From assembly GCF_026571515.1 (NCBI RefSeq), contig NW_026863846.1, positions 124,001 through 188,000 of the forward strand: DNA of 64,000 nucleotides, read 5' to 3'. The position numbers were made by a program, and so were the translations under genes. Source of the stretch: Ruditapes philippinarum. Its lineage: Eukaryota. Each line of letters starts with the position of its first letter. The stretch's first letter is position 1. Below are positions 6,701-45,069 of the stretch, in pieces. The notes below the pieces were generated by a model that made no database searches, had not been told where the DNA came from, and worked only from the letters and a program-made list of their open reading frames with translations.

Positions 6701-9700
6701 ACCTATCGGAAGATGCTTGTTTATTTATTTATTTATTCATTCATTTATTTACTTATTCTTTTTAGATATCATTCTTAGATATTCTACTTTCATGTTTGGA
6801 TTAAGTTTCATATCTAATATTTAAACTTTTCCTCCTATATACAAGCATTAAAAATTTCTTTAGTATTTTAATCTAATTTTTCCTCGGTTGGCTAATTAGT
6901 CCAACATTATATGTAATAAACTATTAAAGACTCTTTTTTTATAAAGTGAGTTGTCCCCCTTGTTCACACCTGTTGAATCGTGCGTACAAGGTTGTGTCTG
7001 CGACGACGAGAAATATTTCCCAGTTTGCGGCGATGATGGACGGTCGTATTTTAGCCCTTGCCATGCCGGGTGCACGGTGAAAGATGTTACGGTATATTTG
7101 TGATTACTAACTATATAGTCGACTAAATTAAAATAAGACATTTATACACTAGCATTTTTTTTACACTTTTCTTGATTGAGGATACAGTTATAAATATTTT
7201 TAATTGTTTTTGTTTGTTTGTTGTTTTTAATTGATTTTACGTCACACCGACACAGTATAAGTCATATGGCGACGTTCTAGATTTACTGGTGGGTGCCGTT
7301 CCGTGCATTATTTCAGGCAAGAACGGGCTCCTAAGTAGAACCACCGACGTTCCGTAAGCTAGCTGGATAGCTTCCTCGCATGAAAGAATCCACAGTCCCT
7401 GACGGGATTCGAACCCACAGCAGTGAGGGACAAGTGGTTTGAAGTCAACGACCTTAAGCAAACGGCCATAACTTAACGTTTACTTTTATTACAAGTAAAG
7501 GTATTTAAAGATCCTGTATGTTGTAATTGAGGTTGTAAACCACACTTAAGAGGAATTATTTATATGTATATAATTATGCTTATAAAACAATTTTCAAACA
7601 TCGAAGAATATGCAAATTATGTACTGCAAATATTTGTACATCTTATATGTAATCATTAAAATATATGCATTCAATTCTTATCGAAAAAATTGAGTTAGAC
7701 TTTATAGAAACTATTTTTTTTAATTACCTCCCTTTATATACATGAAATGTAAATTCGGTAATATCTTTATAAATAACGCTTTTTGGAACTTACAAAATTG
7801 AAAATTTTTAATTTGAGCATCGTATTTATGATACAAAACCATAAAAAAAATGTGTTACATGATCTTTCAGCTGAAATAAGAAATGAGCCGTGTCACGACA
7901 AAACCAACATAGTGGGTTTGCGACCAGCATGGATCCAGACCAGCCTGCGCATCCGCGCAGTCTGGTTAGGATTCATGCTGTTCGCCATTAGTTTCTCTAC
8001 TTGTAATAGGGTTGGTAAGCGAACAGCATGAATCCTAACCAGACTGCGCGGATGCGCAGGCTGGTCTGGAACCATGCTGGTCGCAAACCCACTATGTTGG
8101 TTTTGTCGTGACACGGCTCAGTCTGATTAGGATCCATGCTGTTCGCTTACCAACCCTATTACAAGTAGAGAAACTAATGGCGAACAGCATGGATCCTGAT
8201 CAGACTGTGCGGATGCGCAGGCTGGTCTGGATCTATGCTGGTCGCAAACCCATTATGTTGGTTTTGTCGTGACGCGGCTCATTTCTTATTTCAGACATTT
8301 ATGAACTGCTCGTGTATAAGCACGGGTCAGGCTACAGCTGGACTCTGTGATCAAGGGTGCTCGTCTAAGTTGTACACTTACGCTGCCTTCACGTTTGTTG
8401 GAAAACTTTTCACAGCCTTCAAGATTATACCTACATTTTTGGCAAAAATTAGGTACTCTAAAATTTATTTACTCTCATTTAGTGGCAATTACACAAAACA
8501 ATGATTACTTTAAACTTTGCTAGATAATATTTGAACGTTATCATTGATTTTTCACCAATTTGCATAATTACTATGATGCCAACAGTGTTTTTTTTTATCA
8601 GAGGAGAGAACTAGAACATGCATAATGCCAAACTCCTCGTGGCGGTTACTTCCCTTTATTATAAGAATTAAGAGGTGATTGGCATTGCAGTTTCGATAGG
8701 GCGTGAGTTCAGTTCAAACCCCTGAATATGCAGTTTTTAAATATTTGTCTTTTGTCTTTCTTTTTTTCGTTTCGTCAGATTATGATTTTCTTTATTAATT
8801 CATATCATAAATTTGTAATTAAAACAATGAAGTTTTTTTGTGTGTATATTTAACTGTGATTAACTAGATGTGTTTTGCTAATATATACCGTATTTACTGT
8901 TACAGATGCGTTGAGGAAAGGGACAGAGCAGCTGCTTCAGCATTTTCCGGATTTTTAGTTTCTGCTCTAGGTATACTGACATACATGTATATTTACAATT
9001 ATTTAATGTGAAAAAACTCTCATTTAAAATGAAGGGTAAAACGTAGCTGCGTATCAAAAGAACTATGATAACTTGCTGTCAAAATTACAACATAGTATCT
9101 GAGTATTGATATTGGCAAATTTATTTGTGCATTATTTTATCCTCATTCATGTTCGGAACTGTTTCTATTTATTAATACTGATTGGCTGCTGGACCCTGTT
9201 ACACTCGGAAATATTATTTTTATGTAGGTTTGATTCCCGGCCTTGTTATATATTCGGAAATATTATTCTAATGTAGGTGTGATTAACGGCCTTGTTATAT
9301 TTGAAAATATTATTTTTATGTAGGGTTGGTTCCAAGTCTTGTTATCTTCTGTAATATTATTTTCATAAGGTTTGATTCCCGGCCTTGTTATATTCGGAAA
9401 AAATTATTTTCATGTAGGTTTGGTTCCCAGTCTTGTTATGTTCGGAAATATTATTTTCATGTAGGTTTGGTTCCCGGCCTTGTTATATATAAAAAACTGC
9501 TATTTTATGTAGGTTGGATGCCGGGCCCTGTTATATTTGGAAGGATTATTGACGGAACTTGTTCACTGTGGAAATACACGTGCGGGGAACGCCAGTCTTG
9601 TCTACTTTACGACATCGTATTTTTCCGTAATGCTGTTCACGGATACGGGACAATAGCGACATCCGTCGCCATGGGTATCGTCATTATGTTGTATATCTAT

Positions 9701-10571: not shown

Positions 10572-10832
10572 AAGTAATACAAGAAAAAAACAATCAGCAA
10601 TTTATTTGTTCTAACTTCCGTGTTTTAAAGCTGTTACAATGGACAGTGTCCGAGACTACATCCTATTACATCACGGTCGTTCGTAATAAAGGACGCTTTC
10701 GTTCAATAAACTTTGACCATTTCCTTGCTTTTTTATTGTTTTTTAACAGTATGACTTATTTTTGTTGCTTCTCGTTTGTGTAAAGTTCTTTATCATAACC
10801 CCTCGAGCAAGGATACGAATGTCAGCCATTGG

Positions 10833-10865
<33 letters not shown>

Positions 10866-14000: not shown

Positions 14001-14469
14001 TTACATAGACTTTCCCTAATTTACTATATTTTTCTATACCTTTTTCAATTTCTTCAAAAAAATCTACTTCTTTATGATTTAATACATTTGAGCCTTTCGG
14101 CGGAATATACAAATTGCATAAAAATACATCTTCATTGAAATCAAAAACATCATGAGAAATTTTAAGCCATATAAGTCCATCATTGTTCTTTTCAATAACA
14201 GATATTTTACTTTTTAACTTATTACGAAAATATATTGAGAGTCCTCCACTATATCGACCTTTCTTAGTTCCTTTGCTTTTATTACCAAAAATATGAACAC
14301 TGCTATATCCTTCGATATCTATATTGTATGTATGTGTTTTACTAATCCATGTTTCGCTTAACAAAATTAGGTCAAACGAATTTATGTATTTAATAAATTC
14401 ATCATCAGTTATCTTTCTCAATAAGCCATTAACATTCCATGAGATACACTTTAGCTCCTCTCGACATCC
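11040..14469 (-). pseudogene. LINE ORF2 (AP endonuclease, reverse transcriptase, Cys/His tail), frameshifted
   Basis: ISWNVNGL, LSETW, GDFNSR, SDHAP (APE); QFGF, GVKQGDP, LYADD at about 12229-12243 (RT); broken into several ORF-track pieces. Confidence 0.9.
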
Positions 14470-15584
14470 CTAGTTTGTAATTTGCTTAAATTCCTCACTG
14501 TCTTTATGTTGAACAAAAAGTCTATCACCGATCCACTTGATCTTATTTCCGGCTGCCTTTTCTCTCCGCATAATATGATTTAACGCTTGTCTTTTTTCTA
14601 GAGTTGATTTAGTGAGTTGTACTCCTACACCAGTTTTCAAAGATTTTAAATGCTCTTTTCGTTCGAAAGATGTTTTTCGGATCAATTCCCTATCCTTTAG
14701 CCGATTAAATTTTACCAAAATAGGCCTGGGTCCCTTTCCTTCTTTTGAACCAATTCTATTTACGAAATCAATTTGTATATCATCCGTTATATTCAGATTG
14801 TCTTTAATGAACCTTTTAATCGTTAGCTCACAGTCCTCGTCAACTTCTTCTTTTAATCCATAAAACATAAGATTTTCTCTTAATCCATGAAATTCCACAT
14901 CATTAACTTTTGATTCGAGTTGTTGGTTTTTTTGCTTCAAGATTGTTCACCATTTCCTGGAAATTTTTTACATTTTTCACCTAGCCTTTTAATTTCTTGC
15001 TTTGCCGACTCTAACTTCTTCTTACTTTCCTCAGTTTCCTGATTTATGAATGTACATGATGCTTCAGTTTGTTCAACTCGTATGTCAATGTCTTTGACTT
15101 TAGTTTCTAATGTATCAACTTTCAAACATACCCTATTTACGGCTTTTTCAATACTATCAATTTTAGACATTGACTTTTTAATTTGTTTCATATCGTTTAT
15201 CAAATCAGCAGCCCAAGGTGGCGGGCTGATACTCTGTACACCGGCAGCATTGAAAGGCATGTATGACTGTGGTGGCATGAATGTCATGTTTAAAGGGTTC
15301 GGAATGGGAGGGGTGTATGCCATACTGGATGGTATATTGTTATCCATTTCATAAGCCTTTGCGCCAAATTTGAAATAGTCCGGCGAAGAAGTATTAAGTC
15401 GTTTGTTTTGTTTACTCACACTTTGTGTACTGTCCGTTTCCTGACCACTGGTCAAACCGGTTTCCCTCGTTATGTGTGTAAAGTCTGTGTTATCTAAGTT
15501 TATCGGTGAAATAACTTTCCTTTTTCCTCGCTTTTTCTTCGACTCTGAGTTCGCTTTATCACTATTTATCTTCGGAGGCATCAA
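14470..15584 (-). CDS. LINE ORF1 (coiled coil plus RRM-like region), one frameshift near 14960
   Basis: Heptad-rich segment, then RENLMFYGLKE...VNRIG...RPILVKF typical of L1-type ORF1 RNA-binding domains. Confidence 0.8.
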
Positions 15585-19089: not shown

Positions 19090-22000
19090 CTGTAAATAAA
19101 AAGAAAAGTTTCAGTTTATAAGCGTTTCAGTGACACGGTGTTTGTTTGCTCAGTGTCATATTAACGCTTATTTATCTTGGAAAGGGACGAAAATGTCCCG
19201 ACATATTTTATTTATGCTCGACAGCAAAGAAGGCGTTTAGTTTTTTAGACCACTCTCGAATCCACTTCTCAAAAACTACTTACCAGTGAGTTCGGACCTC
19301 GACCCCCATAGGATTGCAGGACAAACACTAAACTACTAGGCCACAACATCCTTTTGTTCCAAGTATGACGCCAAGATCACCTCCATGAATATAATTTTTA
19401 AAGTATCGTTAATACGTCGGATGAAGGAAGAAAATGCACAACCAAGCACAGGTTTAAGCGGAACTCAAAAAAAAAGTTAAATTAAAATATGTGTAATTTA
19501 TGGTGTCTGATTTGGAACGTGTTGGCGCTAGCGACAACACGACAAACGGCCCCGTTGTCGGACTTTCGTCCTGTCGCTAACGATGCACACCAAACGGTAT
19601 GTTGTCGTGCGGCGTGTTATCGCGATGCCACATTGCCTCTTGGCTCGGTTCAAATCAAAGGACTGGCTTAGAAGCCAAGCGACAGGGCGACAATGCGCCG
19701 CACGATAACGAGCCATTTGGCGTGCTTGTCAAGAGACAGGACGACATGACGACAGTGCGACAATTTTAGAACAAGTAATCAGGGTGCAAGTATATGAAGA
19801 AAAACTCACCGTGGATATATGGATGACAACAGGTGTAACTATATTTTAAAACAAGTTATCAGAGTTCAAGTAAATAAAGAAACACTCACCGTGGATATAC
19901 CAACAAACATCATTGATTCTGGACATGAATTGGAATGTGCCTGTTTAGATCCTAAATAAACGGAAATATAACATAATTGAGCATTGGTAAAAAGATAAAA
20001 AGAATCATCTTTGAAGGAAACTGCAGGATTGCAAAGTACATATGAGCCGCGTCACGACTAAACCAACATAATGGGTTTGCGACCAGCATGGATCCAGACC
20101 AGCCTACGCATCCGCGCAGTCTGATCAGGATCCATTCTGTTCGCTATCATTTTCTCTACTTGTAATAGGGTTTGTAAACGAACAGCATGGATCCTGATCA
20201 GACTGCGCGGAAGCGCAGGCTGGTCTGGATTCATGCTGGTCGCAAACCCATTATGTTGGTTTTGTCGTGACGCGGCTCATTTAATAATAACACAATGTCT
20301 CTCGGGGTAATATTAGCAACCCGAGAATTAAAATAACACCCGGGGACGAAGCCTGAGAGACACGTGTGTTGTTGTTGTTTTGTTTTTTTAAATATATTCA
20401 CATCGTGCCAACATTTTTATCAACCAGATTTTACTGGTTTGAGTCTCGGGCAAGGTTAAATTTAAATTTCTCCTTGACAACTGACTTCAGACATTGTGTG
20501 TAATGAAATTGGTGATTACTAGCTAGATATCTGGGTAAGGCGGCATGGTGGACTGACCGACTAAAAGTCTAATGAAATTGATAATTGGTTTACACAGAAT
20601 TTTTTTTAGTTCGATTATGTAGGAAGCTATTAGCTTATAAACACACTTTCAAATCCGTTCCTCGAATCAACCAGTACTGGAGCAATGAGTGCTCAAGAAA
20701 ACAACGACTTGCCACTGTCAGGGTTTGAACCCATACGGCTAGCGATCATAAGATTACAGTCCGATGAGTTAACCACTTGGCCATGCCGACACAAATTGGT
20801 AATTGATAATTACTAGTTAGATATCTGAGTAAGCCGGTGAGGTTGACCGACCGTCTAAAAGTCTAAAGAAATTACTAGTTAGATATCTGGGTGGATCGAC
20901 CGTTTAAATATGACCGAAAATGTTTTAAATCGGTGTCAGAGCTGTATAGTATGTTATAGTAAATGACTTTAGTGTCAGAGACATAGTCCTTATATCATTT
21001 AACAATTCGGAGTCATATCTTATTATGAAAACCATGCTGATTAACAAACATAATATTTATTTTGCACTTGTCTGCTATTTCTGAAAGAAGCACACATTTA
21101 ATGTAAAAATTTACCAAGTAAGCATGTAACACAACTATAGATTATTAGAAAGGTTACCTGGTAACGAAACGCTCACCGCCACCGATACTTCTGTTGGATA
21201 CCCAGCTGTGTTGCGGGTAAATCCAGTGACCGTGTCATTAGCCTCTCTTTTCTTACGTGCACAAGCTGGGTAACCAATTCTTTCTTGAGTTTTTGTACCC
21301 TAAATAGTTTTCAAGAAACAGAAACAGAAACAACTTTAGGGAAAGATTTTAAAGAGTTAAGTACAAACACTTAAGAAAAATCTATTAACTGGGGATAGGA
21401 CCAGCTTTGACCACAGAGTCATGATTTGAAAAAATGCCACACACGCAATATCTATAGGCTATGCTTTGTAGATATAAAGGATATTTTTAAATGATTTTTT
21501 TTTTCAATATAAAAGCAAGCGACCGCGGGGCGGGGACAAGTTTTGACAAAAAGGTAATTATATGAAAAACTTGGTAGCGTGTTAAAAGAAGATGATTAAC
21601 GATCTTTATGTTCAGTCAGATACACTATCTGTGTGTTCAGTCACATACATTATTTGTCTGTTCAGTCACAAACGCTATCTTTGTGTTAAGTCACAAACAC
21701 TTACTGTGTGTTTGGTCAAATTTGCAATCTGTGTGTTAAGTCACATATGCTAAATGTGTGTTCAGACAAATTTGTTTGTTCAAAAATTATACTATCTGTG
21801 TGTTCAATCGTATTCACTATATATGTGTTCATTCAAATTTATAATCTATGTGTTCAGTCAAATTTATTATCTATGTGTTCAGTCAAATCAATTATCTATG
21901 TGTTCTGTCAAGTTTTTTATCTATCTGTTCAGTCAGATTTATTATCTAAGCGTTCAATCAAATTTATTATCTATGTGTTCAGTCAAGTTTATTATCTATG

Positions 22001-31000: not shown

Positions 31001-34000
31001 AACAGTTTTGTATGATATGATAAAATATGACTAAGTAAAGAACGGTAAGTATGATATTATGAAATATGACTTACTAAAAAACGGTTTGTATGATATCATG
31101 AAACATGACTTACTTAAGAGCCGTTAGTATGATATTATGAATTATGACTTAATAAAGAATGGTTTGTATGATATGATGAAACATGCCTTACTAAAAAAAT
31201 GGTTTGTATGATATTATGAAACATGACTTACTAAACAAGAGGGCCATGATGGCCCTATATCGCTCACCTTAAGGAATAGATCTTAACTGGATTTTTCTTA
31301 TTTAAAACAAGCAACATGTTTATAAAATACTTTAATGTTATTTAGTTAGTGCCAAATGTAAAGTATTTTTAGCCAACAGCAACAGGAATGCAATCAAGTG
31401 TATAGAAATACCTCTTTTTTCTTTTCTTTAAAGTATACATATAGGTTGCTAAAAAATACACTTCCTGTAGTGTGTTTACATCCTGAACATTTTAACAGTG
31501 ATATCATAATTAACAAGGCGAAGTACAAATTTGGATAATACATCAATAAAAATGGGTCAAGGACAAAAATGGCCGGGTTGCATTTGTATACCAAATAACA
31601 TGACTTATGAGTCTGTGATGTTACAAAAATGTACTACCATCGACCATTAATGTTGAACATTTAACTAAGTTGGTAAACAGGAAGTGGATAAGGGATAGAC
31701 CTGAACTTGGGACCACATATTAATGCAGTCACATTACCAAATATCAAGAGGCTTTGTTATGTAGTTGCTGAGAAAACTGTTACGGAAATGTCCTTCTATT
31801 TACAATTAATGCCGAAAATTTAGCTAAGTCATCAAACGGGAAGTGAATGAGCCACATACCCGAAATCATATCCCATTGTATGTGACTACATGTTGATGCT
31901 GTATAGGCTGTGATAATTAGTTGCTGAGAAAATTGTTACGAAAAATTCCTACCATTGACCATTTTTTAACTAAGTCAGTAAACATGAAGTGAATGAGTGA
32001 CAGGCTTGAAATCGAAACCCATGGTATGGAACAATGTGTTAATGCTGTATGATAAATATTATGAGGTTCTCTAGAGTAGTTGCTGAGAAAACTGTTACCA
32101 AAAATGACCCAACCAATTCGCCTACCTGCCTTGAATCAAGTCTCAATACATGATGGTAAACAGTATTTTTTTTGCATATGATTATGTAAATTTTTTCGAA
32201 AACCAGTATTATAGTTGTACCAGATATCCCATTTGATTTTAAATATTAAAATATTTTTTGATAAAAGTGTTTACTCAGGGGTATCATGTTGGGGACAGGA
32301 TCTAACCCCCAAGCATCTGTGGTTTATCATATAAGGACACCCCTTTCTACAAAAACTTCTTCCTGTTCAAATGAGAGGCTCTATACACAGGTTTAATCAT
32401 AAAATTAAATCATGTAAAATGTTATTAAAAAAAACAACAAAAAACAGCAGGGATTTCAGGAAGACTGTTTGACCAAAAATTTTCATGAGTCAAATAACTT
32501 TTTTCTTGTGTTATTTTTCTACACAAATCATTTTCATGTTTTCAGAAATTACTGTTTGGGAAGTCATTTAGAGTAGATTTTCAAGTTTAAATTGATAACT
32601 ATTGTAAGGTAAGGCAATTATCAGCTTCTTGCTTAGAAAACATGATAAAGATAAATATATTAAGTATTTCTAGCACCATGGTTAATTACCATAATTATTG
32701 TTCCATTTTCACTTACATTTATTGAGGTGATTAACACATACATATGTGTACATGCAGGGGTAAAAGTTACAGAAACTGAAAATACTGAAAGAAAAAGTTG
32801 GGGGCCAGGGGGCTGCTAGGACCGCAAGTGGTTCCAGGGAAACGCCCTGGCTAGGAGTCCAGGGGCTGGAGGCCCTCGGAAGCTTTTGCAATTTAGTGAA
32901 TTTATAAGCTCAAAAAAAGGCTCAGATAAATACTCAAGTGCTTTATTTATCTTCAGATGTAATTAATCTGATATGTTAAAATTTACACAAATTCACTGAG
33001 GAATACTTTTTAAGCAATCTATACACATTCCACATAACAAATTATGTTCATTCTTTTTACTATTTTCAATTTCATATCTTAAATTTATTCCTTTTCCATT
33101 GTCTTCAACTTGTTGATGCAGTACACTCTCAACTGACTTGACAATTTCTTCAGAAGTGGAAACATTTTGAATTCTCTCAATCCTAAATGATCCATTACTA
33201 CTTGACTAGTTCTATCATCAAAGTACTGAAAGATTATATTCAGTACTTTGTTATTGGTTTTTGTTAGTTGCCCCATACATATTCAAAGATATTAACTTAT
33301 CTTTCACTTTTGACTTCACTCCATCCTTAACAGATTTGGCTACACCATGTGTTGTTTATAATAATAATGTACATTGCACTGGTTGGAGAAAGAAGAGTTT
33401 TTTCAAGAGCAGGCTTGTCTTCAGCTAAACGTTTGGCAAGATGTTAGATTAGAGATCGCCTGCTATGGAAAATGGCAGACAATGTTCACTAAGAAAGGCA
33501 GTTGTGATTGCTCTTTGTTTGGCAATGCCGTCTTGCATACTTTCAATCTTTTTGTGCACAGCTTTTGATGAGCCTGGCAGTACCTGAAAAAGACAATTTT
33601 CAAATAAAAGATGTATGAAAAAATATCAAAAAATATCACACTCATAAATTGTCAATTTAGTTTTGAAACAAGGAGATAATCAAACTAAAAAAAACATAGA
33701 TAAAGAAAATCGTGTTCTAATCATTAGAATAATATTCAGCTGGAAAAAAATCTATTATTCAAGTGGTGAAAAAAATTACAAGTCCAAATTCACAAGTCCA
33801 AATTACAAGTCCAGACCTATTAAAAATTTGGGCATAGGTTCCCCTGCATAAGGCCATTTTTTAATTTGCCCCCCAACCCTTGCCCAGACCACATGAAAGT
33901 TGGGGGAAGACAGAAGAAAAAGAGGGTGGGGTAATGTGCATTGTTTATTAAATACACAATGCACAACTAAACCTCTTTTCGTTGCTAACACTAGATAGTG

Positions 34001-37000
34001 GCTAAACTACACAGAGAAATGATCTTACTTGGTCTAAGATTCTTTTAGTGGTCCTCATCTTCAGCTCATCGTGATTAAGAAGCACCTTTTTTCTGTTCGA
34101 ATTTGTCTTGTTGATCGTTTTGGAACAGACTTCACAAAAGCCCATTGCATTTGGTTTCTTCAACCAAGCATCCCATTTTTTACCTTTAAAGTCCTCCATT
34201 TGTTTTTTGCACCTTTTTTAGATCGTTAGTATTAACACTTCACTGTTATTGTCATTGTATTTGTACATATATGTATTTTGACATCAAATGACTATGCAAC
34301 AAACGATTTCATTGGCTTGTAAAAATAACGACGACCAATTAAATCTGACATTGTATTAATCTAACTAGCTCAATTTTTCATCGGCAATCTCCGTATAGGC
34401 CCTTTGCATGTTATTGTTATGAAATCTATTAATAGTAACAAACTGCTGATAAAGAGATACAAGTAACTTTCGGATGGTTGGCAAAAAGTATGGTGGCTGA
34501 TAAAATGCAAAATATAGTAATTTTATATTTATAATAAAAAACTTATTTTTCATGAAACAGCTTAGTATTTTATATCATTAGAAAGGTCATTTTACTCATA
34601 TTTTATATATAAAAAATAAATTAACCAAGCGTTTTCATTTTTTCTTGGTAAGGAGTTAAACTTGGTGCTAGAAAACTATTGAAATAACAGTTGAAAAAAA
34701 GCTGAGCTTTATTTTTTAAAAGCAAAAAATGAAAATCCGCTAATATTTTAAAAATATGAATATAAAGAACTTTCAAATGATATAAGAATATAAAAAACCG
34801 ATCCACAAATAAAAAAGTTCAGGAATTTAAAAATTCTGCTGCTATATATTGTTTATAAATATTGGTTCTTCTTTCCAACCGGTAAATCTGCTAAATTCTG
34901 GTAGCAGGTGCTTGTGATGTCATTGTGCAATGGGTCTATTGTAATTGTTTTGATTCGTATATTTCCCATTTTGTGCAAACAGGTCTGAGACGGACAAATT
35001 TATTTAAAATAATATATCAAGCATTATCAAGCAATGTGCACACGCTAATTAATGAGGCATGCACACACACCCTTCCCGATTTCTCAGCGGATTTTCGTCA
35101 TTCAGAAAAATGACCTCGGAGATCGCCGAAAATACGGAATTCCGTCATACATATAAAATCTTAGAGATCATATCACGGGAGGTGATATTTACATAAATAC
35201 TAAATGTCATCCCTTAATACTTCACAGATTGTTAACAAAATACCTGTTTCAACGTAGCCCACCGATAATAGTATTCATCTTCACTTCTTTGTTTTGAAAT
35301 ACGAGTTTATGTTACAAAAATTCTCAATTTCCTTGTTCAAGGCCGCCATTTTGTCCTACTTCCGGTCGGTTAGTTTCGTAAATAGGTCAGATTGATACAG
35401 ATGTTTTCTGGACAAAAATGTTGACTCAAGACTGATTGATATGCATTATTTAGTGATTTGAATTGTATGTTTATGATCAGAATGAAATATAATGGCATGA
35501 TTAAAATCGTTCAGCAGATTCAGTAAAACCAGCGTACACAATGTTGAAGTCCGCAAACCGGAAGGAAGAATCTAAGTAATATCCGTACAGTAAATTAAAC
35601 TTTTATCTTAATCAGCTTTTTTTGTGAAAAAAATACAACATTTTTGTTTACTTTCGTTTCTTTGTGCAATATCTTACACAATAATATGTGCAAGTCAATG
35701 TCAAGAACCAAAATATATTACATTTTATTTCGGAAATGACACAGTCTCCTTTCTGATGGTATTACGAAATTAATGGAAGAATCTATTATTGCATGGGGAA
35801 ATCAACTTCATTTTAGCTCTGAAATTTTGGCTATTCTGATTGACTTTGTTTTGAATTAACATTCACATCTAACAACATTTTCATCTTTCTAATGCTTTAA
35901 CAGAAAAATCCTCATAACAATGTCTGTTGAGACAAAAAATACAAGATACACTTTTTCAATTATCCCTACAAAGACAGTCTATACAATCTTGCAATAAAAA
36001 AACACTTTGACCCCCAAAACAGAGACCAATTTTCAACTCTAGACCATAATTTTAATATACTTTGTAGAATCCAACAAGCTCATGCCTTGAGAGAAATATC
36101 TAAGCTCTAGCCTTTTCCATTTTGAAGTATAAGACCTTTTAAGTTTTTTCTTTTAGTTGCCATAGCAACCAGAGTTTAGCATGAAATGGAATTCTTTGAA
36201 CAATCTTGATAGAGCTTTATACAAAGAGTATTCCTGCCAAGTTTCATTAACATTGGCCTTGCGGTATAATAGAAGATGTCCTTAGAATATTTAAAATGTG
36301 GACGGACACCGGACGACGGACGCCATTTGGTTGGCCATCCAAAAAGCTCACCTGCACTTTGTGCAAGGTGAGCTAAAAACGGTTTGTATGTTATGATGAA
36401 ACATGACTTACTAAAGAACGGTTTTATATGACATTATGAAATATGACTTACTAAAGGACAGCTTGTATGATATTTATGAAAAATGACTTATTAAAAAATA
36501 GTTTGTATGATATTATGAAATAATACTTACTAAAGAACGGTTTGTATGATATGATGAACTATGACTTTCTAAAAAATGGTTTGCATTTTATTATGAAATA
36601 TGACTTACTAAAGAACTGTTTGTATGATATTATGAAATATTACTTAATAAAGAATGGTTTGTATGATATGATGAAACACGACTTACTAAAAATGGTTTGT
36701 ATGATATAATGAAACATGACTTACTAAAGAACGGTTTGTATGTTATGATGAAACATGAATAACTAAAGAACGGTTTGTATGTCAGATGAAACATGGCTTA
36801 CTAAAGAATGGTTAGTATGATATGATGAAATATGACTTACTAAAGAACGGTTTGTATGTTATGTTGAAACATGAATAACTAAAGAACGGTTTGTATGTTA
36901 TGATGAAACATGGCTTACTAAAGAACGGTTTGTATGTTATGATGAAACATGGCTTACAAAAGAATGGTTTGTATGATATGATGAAATATGACTTACTAAA

Positions 37001-40000
37001 GAACGGTTTGTATGATATGATGAAATATGACTAACTAAAGAACGGTTTGTATCATATTATGAAATATGGCTTACTAAAAACGGTTTGTATGGTATTATGA
37101 AATATGACTTACTAAAGAACGGTTTGTATGATATGATGAAATATGAGTAACTTAAGATATGATGAAATATGACTTACTAAAGAACGGTTTGTATGATATG
37201 ACGAAATATGACTTACTAAAAAACGGTTTGTAGGATGGATCGCTCGGCTTAGACGGATTAATCAAACATATCTCCAAATAAAACGTGGTACCAAGGTCTA
37301 GGACCCCAGTGACCTCTTTGACGTTATTTGAGTGGGAACCATCTTCTGATTGTGGACCATTTGGCCAGGGTACCCCAGCAATATCATCATTGGTGTAAGC
37401 CTTGAATGTGACCTCAAACTGGTGAGCATGATCGATCGTCGGCGGGGTGCTACATAGAGAAAATTGAAGCAAACAAAAATTAGAAATGTACAGGGGGGGG
37501 GGGCATTTCTGAATCATACAATATATCTGGCTGAGGATATTGACAGAAATTGAATACATTCACGGATCAAGAGACAGAGAGGGGGCAATAGGGGATCATG
37601 ACCCATAGAAATGAGATTTGGCTATTTTGTATAAAATATATATCAAATAAAGATCTGGATATAACGTTACTCTTTTTTATTATTTTTTTTTCGGTGAAAA
37701 TCGCGCAAAGATTTTTCTCTTGACCCCCACCATCTGGCAAGCTTATTTAAAGCCAAAACCCATTTAAATTATATATAGCACATTGTCGAAATTATGCAAC
37801 CACTTCTCTAATAAAATATTCTGGATTCAAGTCTGAAATTAACAAGAACCACCGCTAAGCAAGTGCCTAGCTCGGTCTTCAGACCCCAGTTCTCTTACTT
37901 AAAATTTGCCATTGCAAAATGAAAATAATGAGATTGCACTTAAAACATAACACTAGCACCAAGAACATGTCATAGGATATGTTGTAGTTTTTTTGTGGTT
38001 TTGACCAGCCTTTGCTTCCGCGCAGTCTGATCAGGATCCATGCTGTTCGCTATCAGTTTCTTTACTTGTTACAAGGTCTGTAAGCAAACAACATGGATCC
38101 TGATCAGACTGCGCGGATGCGCAGGCCGGTCTAGATCCATGCTAGTCGCAAACCCATTATGTTGGTTTTGTCGTGACGCGGCTCATATGTAAATTATAAC
38201 TTACGCTACAGTGATGTCTTGTGGGTCAATCTGTAGACTGGTGCACGCATCCTTGTCGGCATCGTAATAAACTAGGAACGTATAATCAAACAATTTGTCG
38301 TATAACTCGTATCTCTTACATGTCACCGCGAAAACCGCCTTGGTGTCCTATAAACAACGAAAAACATCATCTTAAAGGGACTACACTGGGGTTTAAAAGC
38401 CTAAAAACCTTACATTTGCATTTCTTACATAAATGAGTTTGGGCACTTTTAACAAAAATATATTCAAAGATAGTTAAGAAATATACTTTGAAATAATTGA
38501 AAATCGTATTTGTATGCTTTTCTTGGCCCGTTTTGAGTGAAAAGCGTTTAAACGCTTTTCTTTTTGGGTCATTTTTACAATTTGAATAATAATTCTGAAA
38601 AACAAAGTGCGCAAATGATCTGAAATTTGGCACAAAGATTAATGGTCTCCAAAATGTTTTCAGTCCCGTCATGTCAAAAAACCTCAGTGGAGTCCCTTTA
38701 AACAAATATTTTACATATGAAAAGAATAAATCACGAATAACGCAAAAAAAACTCTATTTTAAACTTAATTTTACTTTGAATCATAAAAATATTACAAATA
38801 AATCAGGAAAACTTTATTTTAAACTAAATTTTACTTTGTATTATAAAAATATGAAAGAATAATGACGAATAACAAACGGAAAACTTCATTTTAAAATAAG
38901 ATTTTACATTGAATCATAAAAACATGAAAACAAGAAGGAGACAAATAACAAAGGAAAACTTTATCTCAAATGTAATTTTACTTTGAATCATAAAAAAGTG
39001 AAAAACGAAAAGTAACGAATAAATCAGGAAAACTTTATCTTAAAACAAAAGTTTACTTCGAATCGTAAATATTTAAAACAAAAAATGAGTAAAAACAGGG
39101 AACTTTATTTTTAACTACATTCTTATTTAATTATAAAAAAGGTAAACAAAAAATGACGACTAACACAGAGAAAACCATTTTTTTTATTTTGAAAACGACG
39201 AAACCAAGATATGACGAATAACAGGGAAAATTACGAAAGACCTGTAGGGCCATTTCAACTTCACGAATTCACGATTTCAATTTCATGAAGTTGAAATCGT
39301 GAATTCGTGAAGTTGAAATCGTGAATTCATGAAGTTGAAATCGTGAATTCTTGAAGTTTAAATCGAGAATTCATGAAGCTGAAATCGGGAATTCATGAAG
39401 TTGAAATGCCCTTACCGGTCTTTCGTAGAAAATTTATTTAAGACTTAATTATACTTAGAATTGTAAAAAAGAAAATGACGAACAGTAAATGCAATGAAAA
39501 TTTATTTAAAGCTTCACCAGAAAAAAAAACATCATATAAATCTTATATTTATAACAATATTTCGTAATTATCAACAATCATCGTGTTTTTTTTTCCAAAA
39601 TATATCATATCTTCTATTTAATTTACAGGGACATACACACCTCAGATAATAAAAATATCTGAGTTTATATTGAAACTGGACACTTCGTTTCTACTGTTAT
39701 TACATAACAGGTGTTTACCATGTTTTTATATCCACCACAATCATACGAGTTGTCGGAAGGATCGAAACTGATTTTAGTTTTAAAGGTTCGACTATCAAGG
39801 TCAGTGCCTATATCACCTCCCGAATTGCCTCGCACCAAGGAGGCAGAACCACCACAGCCTGTGAGAGTTGTCGCCTTCTGAATGTTCTTGTTGTCAACAT
39901 ATTCCTTTGCATCTATCAGAAAACATGCTTGGTATCTACACATAAAAATAAAACAACACAAAAATATCAATTATAAAGATGCGTATAAAGCTACCGTTGA

Positions 40001-43000
40001 ATTGGAATTATATTAATTTAAAGCAAGAATATTGTAACATTGTAAGTGTATATTATCTAGTTCTCTTAAATGACATGAAACTGCAAACATCGTTTTTTCA
40101 GAAACACGCTTAACATTTTATATTGTACTAATAACACGAAGAACATCTCTTCTTTTTATAAAAAAGTAAACAATTGTATAATCAAAATTGCTGTATTTTT
40201 CAGTAAATAATATTTTTCAATTTGTATGTTAAATCACATGTTTGGATTTATTTTGTTATATTGTGTACGACGTGCATTTTCTGTCGTGCCTCACTATTGG
40301 CATGCAAAGATTTTGGTTAATATCAACAAAAATGTAAAATGTTGTTACAAATAATTTTAATGATTTATCAATAAAACTTTATACGTTTTACCAACAAATT
40401 TCTTGAATGATTTATCGATTAAATCTTAATATCTTACTCTAACATATGTCTAACGTATGTCTTTAGTAAACTTAAATCACGCACATTGATTTTTTAATTT
40501 GCATATCCATATCGGTAAAGAGGTAGCCCGTGCCGCTTCAAAACCGAAAGTAGAATGTTTTTATGAATTTTACATTCATTTTTAATTAATTATTGCAATT
40601 TGTCGGAATATGATGTGTATACAGATGAATACATATAATATGTGTGTTGCGTATATAATCAAGTAACTGGTTCATTTATCTCGGGGCGGTGGTAAGTCAA
40701 GATATGTCGATTTTATGTAGTTTATTGTGAAGTTACAGTAACTGAAAACTGGACATATGACAAAACAACACATATATAAAATATCATAGTCTTCTGTGAT
40801 ATACTACTTTACCACATGGCATACGCCTTTTCCTCGTTACAATGGAATTGCGTTGAATTGCTAACCTATCCATCGCCAGCTTGTTTTGAGCAGAGAATGG
40901 CCCGTGCATGTGCAAGAAAGGGTACCCTTTGAGTAGATTTCGCAAAGAGGGTACCGATATGGATATGCACCGTGTAATAAACTGGGCTATCATACTATTT
41001 AATATCTACCTTGAATGATTTATCAATTAAATGTAAACATATTAAATGAAAATACATCACTCACTCTACAAGTTTATCATCGTCAGGTCCAATGTTACTA
41101 AATTTGAAGGCTGTATCTTTCTGATAGACGAACAGGTTCATATCTACGTCAGTGGATGCAGGTGTACTCTTTGTACAGTGACTCCGAACTACATATAGAA
41201 AACAAAAAACATCAATATACAATAGATTGGCTGTTACATTTTACACCCTCATAAAATATACCGGATTTTATTTCATTTGGAATGAATTGATTTATACATT
41301 GTTGGTAAATAATTGCCCACATTCTGATGATGCTAGTTTTGTCGAAGTAAAAACTGAATAAACTTATGAGTCTTTTTATATAAACTTCTTCTGTAAGAAG
41401 CTACATTTAAATACCATAAGCAATGAACACCAAGTTTACATTTTAGGAACAGTATTGTATCGTGTTTTAAATTTTGACCTAAAACTTCTGAAATATTAGC
41501 TGATATACTACTTGTTTACTACTGCTTTCTCATCATATAAATCTATGTAAAATATATGAGGTAAATTCAATGCAAAATATGAGGTAAAATATATATGGTA
41601 AAATGTGAAGGTAAAATATGAAAGTAAATATGAAGTAAGATTTAAGGTAAAATATGAGGTAAAATGTCATGTAAAATATGAGGTATAATATTGAAGGCAA
41701 AATGTAATCTAAAATATGAGGTAAAATGTTACTATGTAAAATATGAGGTAAATGGAGTGTGAAACGTGAGATAAAATATGAAGGTAAAATATATTGTAAA
41801 ATATGAAGGTTCAATATGAGGTAAAATATTAGGTTAAATATGAGGTAAGTGTAAGGTAAAATGTCTTGTAAAATATGAGGTAAAATGTTACAAGGTAAAA
41901 AAGAGGTAAATGTAAGGTAAAATATATGGTAAAATATGAGGTAAAAATATGGTAGAATATGAATGTAAAATATGAATGTAAAAACTGATGGTAAAATATG
42001 AACGTAAAATTTGAAGGTAAAATATGAAAGTAAAATTTGAAGGTAAAATATGAAGGTAAAATATGAATGTAATGACCCGGTTCAAAACTATTCACTTTTG
42101 AGGGGGAGAAGATGTGTAAGCGGTCGGATAGCTCAGTCGGTAGAGTCACGGAACGGTATGCCGAGGGTCCTGTGTTCGAGTCCCGGTCAGGCTGCACATT
42201 TTTCTCATCATGTGACATATTTTCGCCAAACGGGGGACCGTGAAAAATATAGCTCACAGTTGAATTCACATTGCTCTGTAACCTGAGAAATTCGAGGACG
42301 AATTTCAATATAACCGGGGCCGGAGTATGTCACGGTTTAGAAGTGTTAACTTTTAAGGGGAAGAAGATGTGTAAGCGGTCGGAAAGCTCATTCGGTAGAG
42401 TCACGGAACGGTATTCCGAGGGTCCCGTGTTCGAGTCCCAGTCAGGCTTCACATTTCTCTCACCCTGTGACAGTAAAATAGGAAGTAAAAGATAAGATAA
42501 AATATGAGATAAATATAAGGTAAAATATTAATGTAAAATATGAGGTAGAATTTGAGGTAATTTAAACTACTCACTTTCTAGCTTCGGTGTCTGTAAAATA
42601 TAAAACAAGATTAATGATGTTATATACAGTACTGGAAGCAATCTATGTTAAACAGTTTATATTTAGATTTAAAAAAACTTTAGTGTCCGCATCATTATAA
42701 ACTAGTTATAATTTATAAAACGTTTATTAAACGGCAACACATATTTGACATGCATATAAGCAACACACTGTAATTATCTTATTAATTTTGGTTACAACGG
42801 CGTTTTATAACGTCATTTCTTTGACATCATTTGAAATGGCTTAATTATCTCTTCGCAACCGTTTTATTCCACGCCTACTAAACAGTGGCTCTTTCACAGT
42901 TTGGTGATCTGTTTAAATGAGAGCCCTTGACACTTCCGTTATAGAGCCATCGACCAAAACATAGTAGGAAAAAGTAAATACAGTTTATAAAAACATCCGA

Positions 43001-45069
43001 TTAAAAAAAATATGCTTCTTTTTCAAAAATCGAAGAATGCCATGCCGCATAGAACATTTTTCTCATCAGTTTGAAATTTACAAATTTGAAACGGCACTTA
43101 CAATCCAAAAGAGGTCAAAATATGCATAAATACCTCTTATTGCGTTAGTTTAGTTTATACAAATTTATTTTAGTTAGATTGAAACACTCTCGAATCTGTT
43201 CCTGGAACCAACCAGTACTAAGCAATGAATAAAATGTTTATTGCTCAAGGAAACAACGGCTTGCCCCTGAGAGGGTTTGAACCCATGCGGTAAGCAATCC
43301 TTAGATTACTAGTCCGACGAGTTAACCACTCGGCCACTCCGCCACTCTTACTGCGTTAGTAACACAGTAGAATTATATAGATTAATACTGCAAAATCAGT
43401 CATTAATTGCACATAACATGTAAAAAAAATAATTAAATTTTGAATCATTTTACTTTTCTTAAGATCTTAATACATTTTTCTAAAGAATGAATTTCTTGAA
43501 ATATTTTGGCTCATCTGGAGGCGGGCAGCGTTAACGAAATGACTTACATCGGCGTACAGCGTTAACTACTAGTAAATGACATACAACGGTTCAGATTTGA
43601 AGAAATGACTTACACCTGTGTGCAGCTTTAAATAAATGACTTACATCGGCTTGCAGCTTAAAGAAATGACTTACATCGGCGTGCAGCTTTAAAGAAAAGA
43701 CATACATCGGCGTGCAGCTTTAAAGAAATGACTTACATCGGCGTACAGCTTTAAAGAAATGACATACATCGGCGTGCAGCTTTGAAGAAATGACTTACAC
43801 CTGTGTGCAGCTTTAAAGAAATGACTTACATCGGCGTGCAATTTTAAAGAAATGACTTACATCGGCGCGCAACTTTAAAGAAATGACTTACATCGGCTTG
43901 CGGCTTTAAAGAAATGACTTACATCGGCGCGCAGCTTTAAAGACATGGCTTACATCGGCGTGCAGCTTTAAAAGAAATGACTTACATCGGCGTGCAGCTT
44001 TAAAGAAATGACTTACATCGGCGTGCAGCTTTAAAGACATGACTTACATCGGCGTGCAACTTTAAAGAAATGACTTAAATCGGCATGCAGCTTTTAAGAA
44101 ATGACTTACATCGGCGAGCAGCTTTAAAGAAATGACATACATCGGCGTGCAGCTTTGAAGAAATGACTTACACCTGTGTGCAGCTTTAAAGAAATGACTA
44201 ACATCGGCGTGCAGCTTTAAAGAAATGACTTACATCGGCGTGCAGCTTTAAAGAAATGACTTACATCGGCGTACAGCTTTAAAGAAATGACATACATCGG
44301 CGTGCAGCTTTGAAGAAATGACTTACACCTGTGTGCAGCTTTAAAGAAATGACTTACATCGGCGTGCAGCTTTAAAGAAATGACTTACATCGGCGTTGCA
44401 GCTTTAAAGAAATGACTTTACATCGGCGTGCAGCTTTAAAGAAATGACTTACATCGGCGCGCAGCTTTAAAGACATGGCTTACATCGGCGTGCAGCTTTA
44501 AAAGAAATGACTTACATCGGCGTGCAGCTTTAAAGAAATGACTTACATCGGCGTGCAGCTTTAAAGACATGACTTACATCGGCGTGCAACTTTAAAGAAA
44601 ATGACTTAAATCGGCATGCAGCTTTTAAGAAATGACTTACATCGGCGTGCAGCTTTAAAGAAATGACTTACATCGGCATGCAGCTTTAAAGAAATGACTT
44701 ACATCGGCATGCAGCTTTAAAGAAATGACTTACATCGGCATGCAGCTTTAAAGAAATGACTAACATCGGCATGCAGCTTTAAAGAAATGACTTACATCGA
44801 CGTGCAGCTTTAAAGAAATGACTTACATCTGCGCGCAACTTTAAAAAAATGACTAACATCGGCGCGCAACTTTAAAGAGATGACTTACATCGGCGTGCAG
44901 CTTTAAAGAAATGACTTACATCGGCGGTTCCTTTCAAAAACTCACTCCCGGCAGCTCCGTCAGCACCTCCCCCGAGTTTTGGCGGGTATTTCGTGGGTTT
45001 GGTGGCTCCTTTAATGTGGCTCACGTGCATTAACACTAACAACGCGAAGAGAGCACTTGAATATTTCAT
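18976..45069 (-). CDS. ZP (zona pellucida) module type-I membrane precursor, 12 exons, 519 aa
   Basis: Exons 45069-44920, 42590-42575, 41188-41065, 39935-39719, 38347-38205, 37449-37217, 27946-27832, 26575-26447, 23424-23310, 21299-21158, 19951-19890, 19089-18976 join via GT-AG into one 1560-nt ORF. Signal peptide; ZP-C-like motifs GTTFYLEI, IYVKKCTAT, FIEDGC, VYKCEIEYC..C; RKKR furin site; hydrophobic patch VSVAVSV; TM FVGISTILSVAFFVTVILSGVLMY. Confidence 0.88.
19520..19765. mobile_element. Degenerate copy of the foldback element at 2270
   Basis: Shared ctagcgacaacac...gttgtcggactttcgtc and gagacaggacgac..gacagtgcgaca. Confidence 0.65.
19890..19951 (-). CDS. ZP gene exon 11 (SKQAHSNSCPESMMFVGIST)
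   Basis: tttatttag|, ACG|gtgagt, phase 1/0. Confidence 0.82.
20042..20280. mobile_element. MITE family A
   Basis: Full palindromic copy. Confidence 0.9.
20600..20795 (-). mobile_element. tRNA-derived SINE (CORE-like); related copies at about 43165-43345 and 19245-19345
   Basis: Reverse B box gggtttgaaccc; shared aaccagtact...gctcaag.aaacaac body. Confidence 0.7.
21158..21299 (-). CDS. ZP gene exon 10 (PACARKKR furin site, hydrophobic patch)
   Basis: atttag|, CAG|gtaacc, phase 0/1. Confidence 0.88.
21605..22280. repeat. 25-bp minisatellite (atttattatctatgtgttcagtcaa)
   Basis: About 27 units; source of spurious ORFs 21708-22280. Confidence 0.9.
22343..23240 (+). mobile_element. Non-autonomous Helentron/HINE (DTC84/pearl-like) with internal 146-bp tandem repeats
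   Basis: aaacaagag start; about 5 x 146-bp units (caatatggtga at 22486, 22632, 22924, 23070); (GGAC)n microsatellite; terminal hairpin atgctcccccgaaatatttcgggaagcat. Confidence 0.85.
23310..23424 (-). CDS. ZP gene exon 9 (VSFARA...VYKCEIEYCFSSSDTKCF)
   Basis: atcag|, |gtaagt, phase 2/0. Confidence 0.88.
23480..25520. repeat. 36-bp minisatellite (atgaaatacagaatagatataactatgatatcatat), interrupted at about 24865-25260
   Basis: Dozens of units; source of many spurious ORFs. Confidence 0.92.
25832..26196. mobile_element. Kolobok-type MITE family B (TTAA|agggactccactgagg)
   Basis: TTAA-flanked TIRs; copies at 38372-38701 and 46345-46706. Confidence 0.85.
26447..26575 (-). CDS. ZP gene exon 8 (CGLGVDP...TPNCF)
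   Basis: tttgtag|, CG|gttagt, phase 2/2. Confidence 0.87.
27113..27820. mobile_element. Long foldback MITE (~300-bp inverted arms)
   Basis: 27140-27420 is the reverse complement of about 27485-27770. Confidence 0.8.
27832..27946 (-). CDS. ZP gene exon 7 (GIYVKKCTAT...FIEDG)
   Basis: tttacag|, GG|gtacgt, phase 1/2. Confidence 0.9.
30071..30685. mobile_element. HINE-like insertion in the 39-bp array, carrying a tRNA-like segment (about 30250-30325, - strand)
   Basis: Subterminal IR atttgtttgggtc / gacccaaacaaat with a terminal hairpin; the array resumes in register. Confidence 0.65.
31234..36379 (+). mobile_element. 5.1-kb composite Helentron/HINE inserted in the 39-bp array
   Basis: aacaagagggccatgatggccctatatcgctcacct start; ~157-bp internal repeats 31600-32110; ggacgga tract; terminal hairpin agctcacctgcactttgtgcaaggtgagct; inserted in an A-run. 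Confidence 0.8.
33085..34199 (-). pseudogene. Decayed hAT-like transposase fragments inside the HINE
   Basis: WLKKPNAMGFCEVCSKTI...LLNH (BED-finger-like) and NKVLNIIFQYFDD..VVMDHL (hAT catalytic-region-like); many stops. Confidence 0.5.
37217..37449 (-). CDS. ZP gene exon 6 (FEVTFKAY...GTTFYLEICL...YKPFF)
   Basis: ctatgtag|, TTTA|gtaagt, phase 2/1. Confidence 0.87.
38003..38186. mobile_element. MITE family A, truncated at the left end
   Basis: Same sequence family. Confidence 0.85.
38205..38347 (-). CDS. ZP gene exon 5 (DTKAVFAVTC...DACTSLQ)
   Basis: tttatag|, |gtaagt, phase 0/2. Confidence 0.88.
38372..38701. mobile_element. Kolobok-type MITE family B
   Basis: ttaaagggactacactg ... cagtggagtccctttaa. 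Confidence 0.85.
38720..39230. repeat. Degenerate ~60-70-bp A-rich tandem repeat
   Basis: Recurrent aaaactttattttaaac..ttttactttgaatcataaaaa. Confidence 0.65.
39232..39427. mobile_element. Small MITE with internal 21-bp repeats
   Basis: TIR tacgaaagacctgtagggc / gcccttaccggtctttcgta; (gaagttgaaatcgtgaattcat)n. Confidence 0.75.
39719..39935 (-). CDS. ZP gene exon 4 (YQACFLID...YDCGGYKNM)
   Basis: tgtgtag|, ATG|gtaaac, phase 2/0. Confidence 0.88.
41065..41188 (-). CDS. ZP gene exon 3 (IRSHCTK...DKLV)
   Basis: tatgtag|, |gtgagt, phase 1/2. Confidence 0.85.
41545..42560. repeat. 12-13-bp minisatellite (gtaaaatatgag), split by the TRIM
   Basis: Many degenerate units. Confidence 0.88.
42073..42472 (+). 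mobile_element. TRIM (miniature LTR retroelement) with tRNA-like Pol III boxes in both LTRs
   Basis: 145-bp direct repeats 42073-42217 and 42328-42472 (TG...CA); 110-bp core with a PBS-like and a purine-rich end; 4-bp TSD GTAA; A box tagctcagtcggtagag and B box gttcgagtcc. Confidence 0.85.
42575..42590 (-). CDS. ZP gene exon 2, 16-nt microexon (TPKLE)
   Basis: ttttacag|ACACCGAAGCTAGAAA|gtgagt; needed to convert phase 0 to phase 1. Confidence 0.75.
43165..43345 (-). mobile_element. tRNA-derived SINE (same family as 20600-20795)
   Basis: Shared body and reverse A/B boxes. Confidence 0.7.
43526..44926 (-). repeat. 31-bp minisatellite made of the ZP exon 1 donor junction (about 45 units)
   Basis: Unit CGCCGAT|GTAAGTCATTTCTTTAAAGCTGCA; the first unit overlaps the exon end at 44920. 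Confidence 0.95.
44920..45069 (-). CDS. ZP gene coding exon 1 (signal peptide MKYSSALFALLVLMHVSHIKG...)
   Basis: ATG at 45069; GAT|gtaagt donor, phase 0. Confidence 0.85.

What the first reader, a model, noticed from the sequence alone, without database searches (positions are those of the whole stretch)
9181..44926. Recurrent splice-junction-seeded tandem arrays: splice sites amplified into the intron in two unrelated genes
Seen: four independent cases where the repeat unit is a real exon-intron junction and the array runs only into the intron. These are the ZP exon 1 donor (31 bp, ~45x), the ZP exon 6 donor (39 bp, ~60x), the ZP exon 11 donor (2x) and the SLCO exon I acceptor (~47 bp, 7x). 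The units are unrelated in sequence except that both large donor arrays begin GTAAGTCAT. Established: GTAAGT is the optimal U1 snRNA pairing site, and U1 binding can suppress premature polyadenylation (telescripting). Inference: either a mutational mechanism that preferentially seeds tandem duplication at splice junctions, or a retained regulatory device (over 100 decoy/U1 landing sites in one pre-mRNA) that tunes splicing, NMD or isoform length through copy number. A neutral survivor effect is also possible, since duplications spanning a junction leave one intact exon and look intronic.
Basis: partly seen in the sequence, partly recalled or inferred. Interest (0 to 1): 0.85.

Follow-up and report, generated by a model that had tools for sequence, protein, structure and literature searches.

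The report
Splice-junction minisatellites ("mirages") in bivalve genes
Four tandem repeats in two clam-like genes really are built from copies of an exon-intron junction. This is an already described kind of repeat ("mirage", or F7-type boundary minisatellite), and here it looks like a tolerated by-product of a very repeat-rich genome, not a regulatory device.

Summary
Observation confirmed. There are four junction repeats:
- a 31-bp x45 array at 43520-44926;
- a 39-bp array of about 59 units at 28985-37236, which is one array split by two later insertions;
- an 80-nt, roughly 2-copy duplication at 19763-19899;
- a 47-bp x7.5 array at 9197-9550.

Each unit consists of an exon edge plus its splice site, and each array lies on the intron side.

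Spliced transcript contigs from two studies join the first coding exon at the first GTAAGT only. Homologues (Mercenaria LOC123541078, P0008) support the first donor of exon 6. Pfam OATP colinearity supports the last acceptor copy.

All three large arrays are unique to this locus in the 1.41-Gb genome. The one paralogue found and a 67%-identical relative lack the exon-6 array. GTAAGT decays no more slowly than the rest of the unit.

Tandem repeats fill 18% of the window and 35% of the ZP-like gene's introns. Random placement therefore predicts 0.7-0.9 junction-spanning arrays here, against 3 seen (P 0.03-0.06, uncorrected for post-hoc choice).

The kind is known: amphioxus "mirages", and the human F7, IFI6, CBS, LMNB2 and PDGF boundary minisatellites. 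The scan noted the same thing on other pieces of this genome, and two follow-ups also called it mirages.

Best reading: neutral slippage minisatellites, tolerated because the exon-proximal site is used. A modest junction bias is not excluded.

The parts
44920..45072 (-). First coding exon of the ZP-like gene (ATG at 45069). Its last ~22 nt are the founder copy of the exon part of the 31-bp unit.
   Evidence: Transcript contigs X1 record 1 and X3 record 7 end here and splice onward. The exon end ...EFLKGTAD is conserved in Mercenaria P0009.
43520..44926 (-). 31-bp minisatellite of 45 units. Each unit is a donor (GTAAGTCAT) plus a diverged copy of the exon end. It has higher-order structure.
   Evidence: Unique to this locus. 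A 528-nt internal segment is repeated at 97% identity.
42575..42590 (-). 16-nt micro-exon (exon 2), flanked by AG and GTGAGT.
   Evidence: 16-17 letters lie between exon pieces in both transcript contigs (table 5c). Located. It encodes TPKLE, as in Mercenaria.
41065..41188 (-). Exon 3.
   Evidence: table 8.
39718..39935 (-). Exon 4.
   Evidence: table 8.
37217..37449 (-). Exon 6. Its last ~18+ nt are the founder of the exon part of the 39-bp unit. The donor GT is at 37216.
   Evidence: Joining 37217 to 27946 gives ...YKPFF-N-DGFEPIG, which matches NYQFFNDGVGPIG of P0008.
36373..37236 (-). 39-bp minisatellite, proximal block (about 19-22 units).
31236..36372 (.). 5.1-kb insertion inside the 39-bp array. 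The unit phase continues across it.
   Evidence: No Pfam hit on its ORFs.
30685..31235 (-). 39-bp minisatellite, middle block (14 units).
30069..30684 (.). 616-nt insertion inside the 39-bp array.
28985..30068 (-). 39-bp minisatellite, distal block (26-28 units).
27832..27946 (-). Exon 7, the acceptor partner of the exon-6 donor.
19890..19951 (-). Exon 11. The donor GTGAGT is at 19889.
   Evidence: Its similarity to the P0008 transmembrane-proximal segment was judged by eye only.
19763..19899 (-). 80-nt-period duplication (two copies, 88% identity) of the last 10 nt of exon 11, the donor and about 47 nt of intron.
9197..9550 (+). 47-bp minisatellite: six decoy copies of the acceptor plus the first 36 nt of the exon, then the authentic copy.
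   Evidence: Unique in the genome.
9513..9793 (+). OATP/SLCO exon whose 5' edge seeded the 47-bp array.
   Evidence: Pfam OATP profile positions 506-542 start at this exon. The preceding exons cover up to position 487, plus one short exon.

Best explanation
These are 'mirage' minisatellites, also known as F7-type boundary minisatellites. My reading of how they arose has five steps.

1. Origin. A short tandem duplication (31, 39, 47 or 80 nt) happened to span a splice junction. Replication slippage or unequal exchange is the likely cause. This step is inferred.

2. Tolerance. The spliceosome keeps using the exon-proximal copy, so the mRNA does not change and the duplication is as harmless as any intronic one. 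Use of the first donor is shown by RNA for the first coding exon and by homology for exon 6. Use of the last acceptor is supported by profile colinearity.

3. One-sided look. The same duplication placed wholly inside an exon would be removed by selection. That is why the arrays appear to run only into the intron. This step is inferred.

4. Growth. Unequal exchange then expanded the arrays to 45-60 units and partly homogenised them. This is shown by the higher-order repeats and by a 97%-identical 528-nt internal duplication.

5. Decay. The extra splice sites decay like the rest of the unit (shown), and transposons have since landed in one array (shown).

Such arrays recur here because tandem repeats fill about a third of the intron sequence, so roughly one junction-spanning array per two genes is expected by chance.
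For: Arrays and unit composition.

RNA: contigs from two studies join 44920/44921 to the micro-exon, then to 41188. Depth is about 0-6 across the array, against 11-36 on the exons.

The exon ends are ancestral coding sequence:
- ...KGTAD then TPKLE in Mercenaria P0009;
- FFNDG across the exon 6/7 join in P0008.

The arrays are locus-specific in 1.41 Gb.

The exon-6 array is absent beside the equivalent donor in two places:
- the paralogue on C10334;
- relative P0002, which reads 150 nt into a non-repetitive intron and is not encoded in this genome.

Non-consensus rate at GTAAGT against the rest of the unit:
- 31-bp array: 10.5% against 7.4%, rank 25 of 31 windows;
- 39-bp array: 8.8% against 11.4%, rank 12 of 39.
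The most variable columns include the CpG positions.

Two insertions split the 39-bp array.

Tandem repeats cover 17.9% of the window and 34.7% of ZP intron bases. The null expectation is 0.71-0.91 junction-spanning arrays.

Precedents:
- PMC1557585 describes minisatellites whose first monomer spans an exon-intron boundary in F7, IFI6 (6-16), CBS, LMNB2 and PDGF, with the most upstream donor selected.
- PMC3087553 and PMC3902484 describe amphioxus mirages at both donor and acceptor boundaries that do not disturb splicing.
Against: Three arrays seen against 0.7-0.9 expected is still a 3-4 fold excess (P 0.03-0.06). First-stage readers also flagged about ten similar loci in this genome, so some junction bias is possible.

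Many decoys remain perfect consensus donors (32 of 45 and 36 of 59). All six decoy acceptors keep AG.

RNA evidence covers only one of the four junctions. It comes mostly from assembled contigs, which drop rare isoforms, so low-level decoy use is not excluded.

Arrays homogenised by unequal exchange give a weak per-site selection test.
Confidence: 0.75

Rival explanations
1. A mutational bias places tandem duplications at splice junctions more often than elsewhere. One route would be slippage between the splice-site motif and a similar motif a unit-length away in the exon. Another would be a transcription- or splicing-coupled lesion.
For: The local excess is 3 seen against 0.7-0.9 expected.

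The exon stretch one unit-length upstream of each donor resembles the whole unit. Exon 1 has AGTGAG about 30 nt before the donor's AAGT, and exon 6 has CTAAGCC about 38 nt before GTAAGTC. These are possible short direct repeats.

Many similar first-stage notes exist in this genome, and one follow-up proposed slippage between short direct repeats.
Against: The window was chosen post hoc. The microhomologies are only 3-5 nt in an AT-rich genome.

Genome-wide, periodic GTAAGT triples (12,302 matches) are not more common than the reversed control (20,385).

I inspected the first five GTAAGT-bearing array families listed genome-wide. None abuts an obvious coding exon, and one is ambiguous.
Confidence: 0.13
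2. The arrays are a retained regulatory device. Dozens of decoy donors or acceptors would act as U1 landing sites or competing splice sites, tuning splicing, NMD, premature polyadenylation or isoform length through copy number.
For: There are many intact consensus sites. The 39-bp unit is a multiple of 3 and stays open for two units past exon 6. The penultimate acceptor copy is 48 nt upstream and in frame. In human IFI6 the two proximal pseudo-sites are used constitutively (PMC1557585).
Against: The splice motif is no better conserved than the rest of the unit. The exon-6 array is absent from the paralogue and from the related species. Transcript contigs show only the first donor, with near-zero depth in the array. 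Use of the second 31-bp donor would shift the frame.
Confidence: 0.07
3. A dispersed satellite or transposon-borne repeat landed next to the exons and donated the splice sites, so the exon ends would derive from the repeat and not the reverse.
For: The genome is full of repeats. The two donor units share GTAAGTCAT.
Against: Each array occurs only at this locus in 1.41 Gb. The exon ends inside the units are conserved coding sequence in homologues at 47-61% identity.
Confidence: 0.02

Closest known systems
Amphioxus 'mirages'. [quoted passage not shown] 2002, as described in PMC3087553 and PMC3902484).
   Same: The unit spans an exon-intron boundary. Both donor and acceptor boundaries occur. Several genes are affected in one genome. 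Normal splicing is not disturbed. Repeat turnover shows concerted evolution, with more diverged edge units.
   Different: These are in a different phylum (a bivalve). Copy numbers are much higher (45 and about 59, against a few to about 6 reported for the globins). Three occur in one gene. Length instability was not tested here.
Human F7 IVS7 37-bp VNTR and the related IFI6 (6-16), CBS IVS13, LMNB2 and PDGF boundary minisatellites (PMC1557585).
   Same: The first monomer spans the exon-intron boundary, so the donor is reiterated in the intron. Only the most upstream donor is used in F7, LMNB2 and PDGF, which matches the exon-1 RNA result here.
   Different: F7 has 5-9 copies with 4 nt of exon per unit. 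Here there are 45-59 copies with about 18-22 nt of exon per unit. There is also an acceptor-side array. No functional assay was done here.
Intron gain by tandem duplication across AG/GT proto-splice sites (the Rogers model, as discussed in PMC3087553).
   Same: A tandem duplication that contains splice signals is hidden from the mRNA by splicing.
   Different: No new intron is created here. The duplicates sit in a pre-existing intron.

Membership tests
Mirage / exon-boundary minisatellite | Head-to-tail tandem array of a 10-160 nt unit. | tested here: met
   TRF: 31 bp x45, 39 bp x about 59, 47 bp x7.5. The 80-nt x about 1.7 repeat comes.
Mirage / exon-boundary minisatellite | The terminal unit spans a real exon-intron boundary, so the splice site is reiterated in the intron. 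| tested here: met
   RNA contigs support the first coding exon. Homology across the join supports exon 6. OATP profile colinearity supports the acceptor. Exon 11 rests on sequence and weak similarity only.
Mirage / exon-boundary minisatellite | The exon part of the unit derives from ancestral coding sequence, not the reverse. | tested here: met
   The exon ends are conserved in the Mercenaria protein and in P0008. The arrays are unique to the locus.
Mirage / exon-boundary minisatellite | Regular splicing uses the authentic, exon-proximal site. | tested here: met
   Shown by RNA for the 31-bp donor array only. Inferred from homology for exon 6 and for the acceptor. Rare decoy use is not excluded.
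Mirage / exon-boundary minisatellite | Copy-number instability or polymorphism (VNTR behaviour). | tested here: inconclusive
   Higher-order repeats and a 97%-identical 528-nt internal duplication show recent exchange. P0001, from another sample, carries different first units. No population or long-read DNA was laid.
Zona pellucida (ZP) domain protein | Pfam ZP-C / Zona_pellucida match above the gathering score. | tested here: inconclusive
   Homologue P0008 scores 17.2 bits against a cut-off of 24.6, E 0.0056. Single exons give no hit. A basic RKKR site and a C-terminal hydrophobic exon fit a ZP-like precursor, but only by eye.
OATP / SLCO transporter | Pfam PF03137 match above the gathering score. 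| tested here: met
   Seven exon ORFs match colinear parts of PF03137 (positions 58-542), and there is a Kazal exon.

The most novel reading that the evidence does not exclude
Boundary minisatellites are genuinely over-represented at splice junctions across this bivalve genome. This would reflect either a junction-biased duplication process or weak selection for reiterated U1/U2AF binding sites. Bivalves would then be a natural system in which splice-site copy number varies between individuals.
Probability: 0.12. Interest if true: 0.6.

Novelty: new member of a known kind. Interest (0 to 1): 0.28.

Why it matters
The finding extends a phenomenon described in amphioxus and in a handful of human genes to a mollusc, and at unusually high copy number: up to about 59 reiterated consensus donors in one intron, and three affected junctions in one gene.

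Such loci are natural tests of how the spliceosome picks one site among dozens of identical ones. They are also a trap for gene predictors and read aligners in repeat-rich invertebrate genomes.

As far as the evidence goes, there is no new mechanism or function here.

Tried and rejected
- **Pfam on single ZP exons:** no hits.
- **The look-up of encoding contigs:** I tried it for P0002, P0003 and P0008, to see whether the Mercenaria orthologue and the 67% relative carry arrays.
- **Original mirage paper (PMC117041):** not held. The class is therefore cited through PMC3087553 and PMC3902484.
- **Genome-wide periodic GTAAGT pattern against the reversed control:** no excess, but the counts are matches, dominated by a few big arrays and (GTAA)n. 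It is only a crude test.
- **First five GTAAGT-bearing array families genome-wide:** no clear coding exon lies upstream. One family on C109 may follow a short exon, which is undecided.
- **Dispersed-satellite origin:** rejected.
- **Second literature search:** my search for bivalve minisatellites in introns returned nothing specific.
- **Spliced protein model:** I built none.
- **Read laying:** it allows one call of at most 6 kb, so only the first-coding-exon donor could be tested with RNA. The exon-6 donor, the exon-11 donor and the SLCO acceptor were not.

Full report
**What is there**

TRF finds 61 rows of tandem repeats in the 64-kb window.
- a 31-bp array of 45 units at 43520-44926;
- a 39-bp array in three blocks (36373-37236, 30685-31235, 28985-30068), with 59 gapless units;
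- a 47-bp array at 9197-9550 on the plus strand.

On the minus strand both large units start GTAAGTCAT.

The three 39-bp blocks are one array. The unit is cut in phase by a 5.1-kb insertion and a 616-nt insertion.

The '2x' case at exon 11 is an 80-nt-period duplication with 57 nt at 88% identity. It carries the last 10 nt of the exon, GTGAGT and about 47 nt of intron.

**Are the junctions real?**

Two runs from different studies hold transcript contigs of 1640 and 1662 nt. Their pieces lie at 39718-39935, then 41065-41188, then 16-17 unplaced letters, then 44920/44921-45072 (tables 8 and 5c).

The unplaced letters are a 16-nt micro-exon at 42590-42575, flanked by AG and GTGAGT.

So the first coding exon ends exactly at the first GTAAGT of the 31-bp array. 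Depth across the array is about 0-6, against 11-36 on the exons.

The X1 contig runs 245 nt beyond 45072 without lying on the next 128 bases.

An exon-6 search of the 1.84-billion-protein library returned two useful homologues: the Mercenaria mercenaria protein LOC123541078 (P0003/P0009) and a 500-aa homologue, P0008. tblastn of these against the window gives eleven exons.
- The first coding exon ends ...EFLKGTAD and the micro-exon encodes TPKLE, exactly as in Mercenaria.
- Joining 37217 to 27946 gives ...YKPFF-N-DGFEPIG, against NYQFFNDGVGPIG in P0008. The first donor of exon 6 is therefore the one that fits homology.

The exon ends that form part of the repeat units are ancestral coding sequence.

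On the plus strand, seven exon ORFs match colinear parts of Pfam OATP. The exon starting at 9513 takes up the profile at position 506, after exons that reach 487 plus one short exon. The last acceptor copy is the authentic one.

Exons were searched singly by reference.

**What the units are made of**

- The 31-bp unit is about 9 nt of intron plus about 22 nt resembling the exon end.
- The 39-bp unit holds at least 18 nt of exon end.
- The 47-bp unit is 11 nt of intron end with AG, plus 36 nt of exon start.

In all three, the exon stretch one unit-length from the cut aligns to the unit far better than shuffles do, and the next unit-length does not.

**Origin**

Each array occurs only at this locus in the 1.41-Gb genome, so these are not dispersed satellites.

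The only paralogous exon-6-like sequence, on contig C10334, has a G|GTAAGT donor and no minisatellite within 3.2 kb.

P0002 is a 67%-identical relative that is not encoded in this genome. It reads from the same FF|A-GTAAG junction into 150 nt of non-repetitive intron. The exon-6 array is therefore lineage-specific.

P0001, which is 99% identical and from another sample, reads into the array but with different first units.

Inside the 31-bp array, a 528-nt segment (17 units) recurs at 97% identity, against 88-92% in other registers. Unit variants recur in blocks. This is the signature of unequal exchange.

**Selection on the decoy sites?**

Across 43 gapless 31-bp units, the non-consensus rate is 10.5% at GTAAGT and 7.4% elsewhere (rank 25 of 31 cyclic windows). 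Across 59 units of 39 bp, it is 8.8% against 11.4% (rank 12 of 39).

The most variable columns include the CpG positions. The test is weak, because arrays are homogenised.

**More than chance?**

I took the 18 distinct arrays inside the two genes, with 20 and 18 junctions. Placing a founder segment of each unit length uniformly over intron plus junction-spanning positions predicts 0.71-0.91 junction-spanning arrays.

Three are seen among TRF-detected arrays, giving P 0.03-0.06. That is before any correction for the window having been picked because of this pattern.

Genome-wide, triples of GTAAGT spaced 20-40 nt give 12,302 matches, against 20,385 for the reversed control. I inspected the first five GTAAGT-bearing array families. 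None abuts an obvious coding exon.

A strong junction preference is therefore not supported. A modest one is not excluded.

**What is known**

PMC1557585 states that several human genes carry minisatellites whose first monomer spans an exon-intron boundary. Its examples are:
- F7 IVS7 (37 bp x5-9);
- IFI6/6-16 (25 pseudo-sites, the two proximal ones used);
- CBS IVS13;
- LMNB2;
- PDGF.

It shows that in F7 the most upstream donor is chosen, by an oriented scanning-type process.

PMC3087553 and PMC3902484 describe the same structures in amphioxus as 'mirages'. They occur in Adh3, globins, TnC and PGBD5, at both 5' and 3' exon boundaries. They show repeat turnover and no disturbance of splicing.

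The lead to the word 'mirage' came from two follow-up notes of this scan on other pieces of this genome. I checked it in the two papers. The original 2002 paper is not held.

**Verdict**

The pattern is a known class. The best explanation is neutral: these are boundary-spanning slippage minisatellites, tolerated because the exon-proximal site is used, in a genome where a third of the intron sequence is minisatellite.

New here are the phylum, the copy numbers and three affected junctions in one gene.

Noticed in passing
window 42575-42590 (-): A 16-nt micro-exon encoding TPKLE, flanked by AG and GTGAGT. It is present in transcript contigs of two studies and conserved in the Mercenaria protein. 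Gene predictors miss exons like this easily.
   Followed up: yes
window 11043-15587 (-): A non-LTR retrotransposon with long open frames, lying between the two genes. Pfam finds Exo_endo_phos (E 6e-9) and RVT_1 (E 5e-24).
   Followed up: partly
window 45073-45200 and upstream (-): The X1 transcript contig continues 245 nt beyond the acceptor at 45072 without lying on the adjacent DNA. The ZP-like gene therefore has at least one upstream non-coding exon outside the stretch laid.
   Followed up: no
window 23482-25518 (-): A 36-bp minisatellite (about 45 units in two blocks) ends about 50 nt upstream of the exon-9 acceptor (23424). Its unit contains a TCATAG motif resembling the acceptor region. 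It may be an old, degraded acceptor-side mirage. This is undecided.
   Followed up: no
window 50255-51110: A long degenerate (GAT)n tract of about 229 copies at 65% matches. No convincing open frame covers it. Its meaning is unknown.
   Followed up: partly
window 42031-43713: Very high RNA depth (hundreds to tens of thousands) at 90-95% likeness, with many loose ends. These are reads from a dispersed expressed repeat family inside intron 1, not from this gene.
   Followed up: no
L031/L032 (G000:C109 about 108975 and 124500): An 18-bp GT[AG]AGT-containing array follows a short AG-flanked segment. It occurs twice, 15.5 kb apart, as part of a segmental duplication. It may be another boundary minisatellite on a short (perhaps UTR) exon.
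   Followed up: partly
window 26449 (-): The exon-8 donor reads GTTAGTCAT. Three donors of this gene therefore share GT[AT]AGTCAT, and two of them seeded arrays. Chance is not excluded.
   Followed up: no
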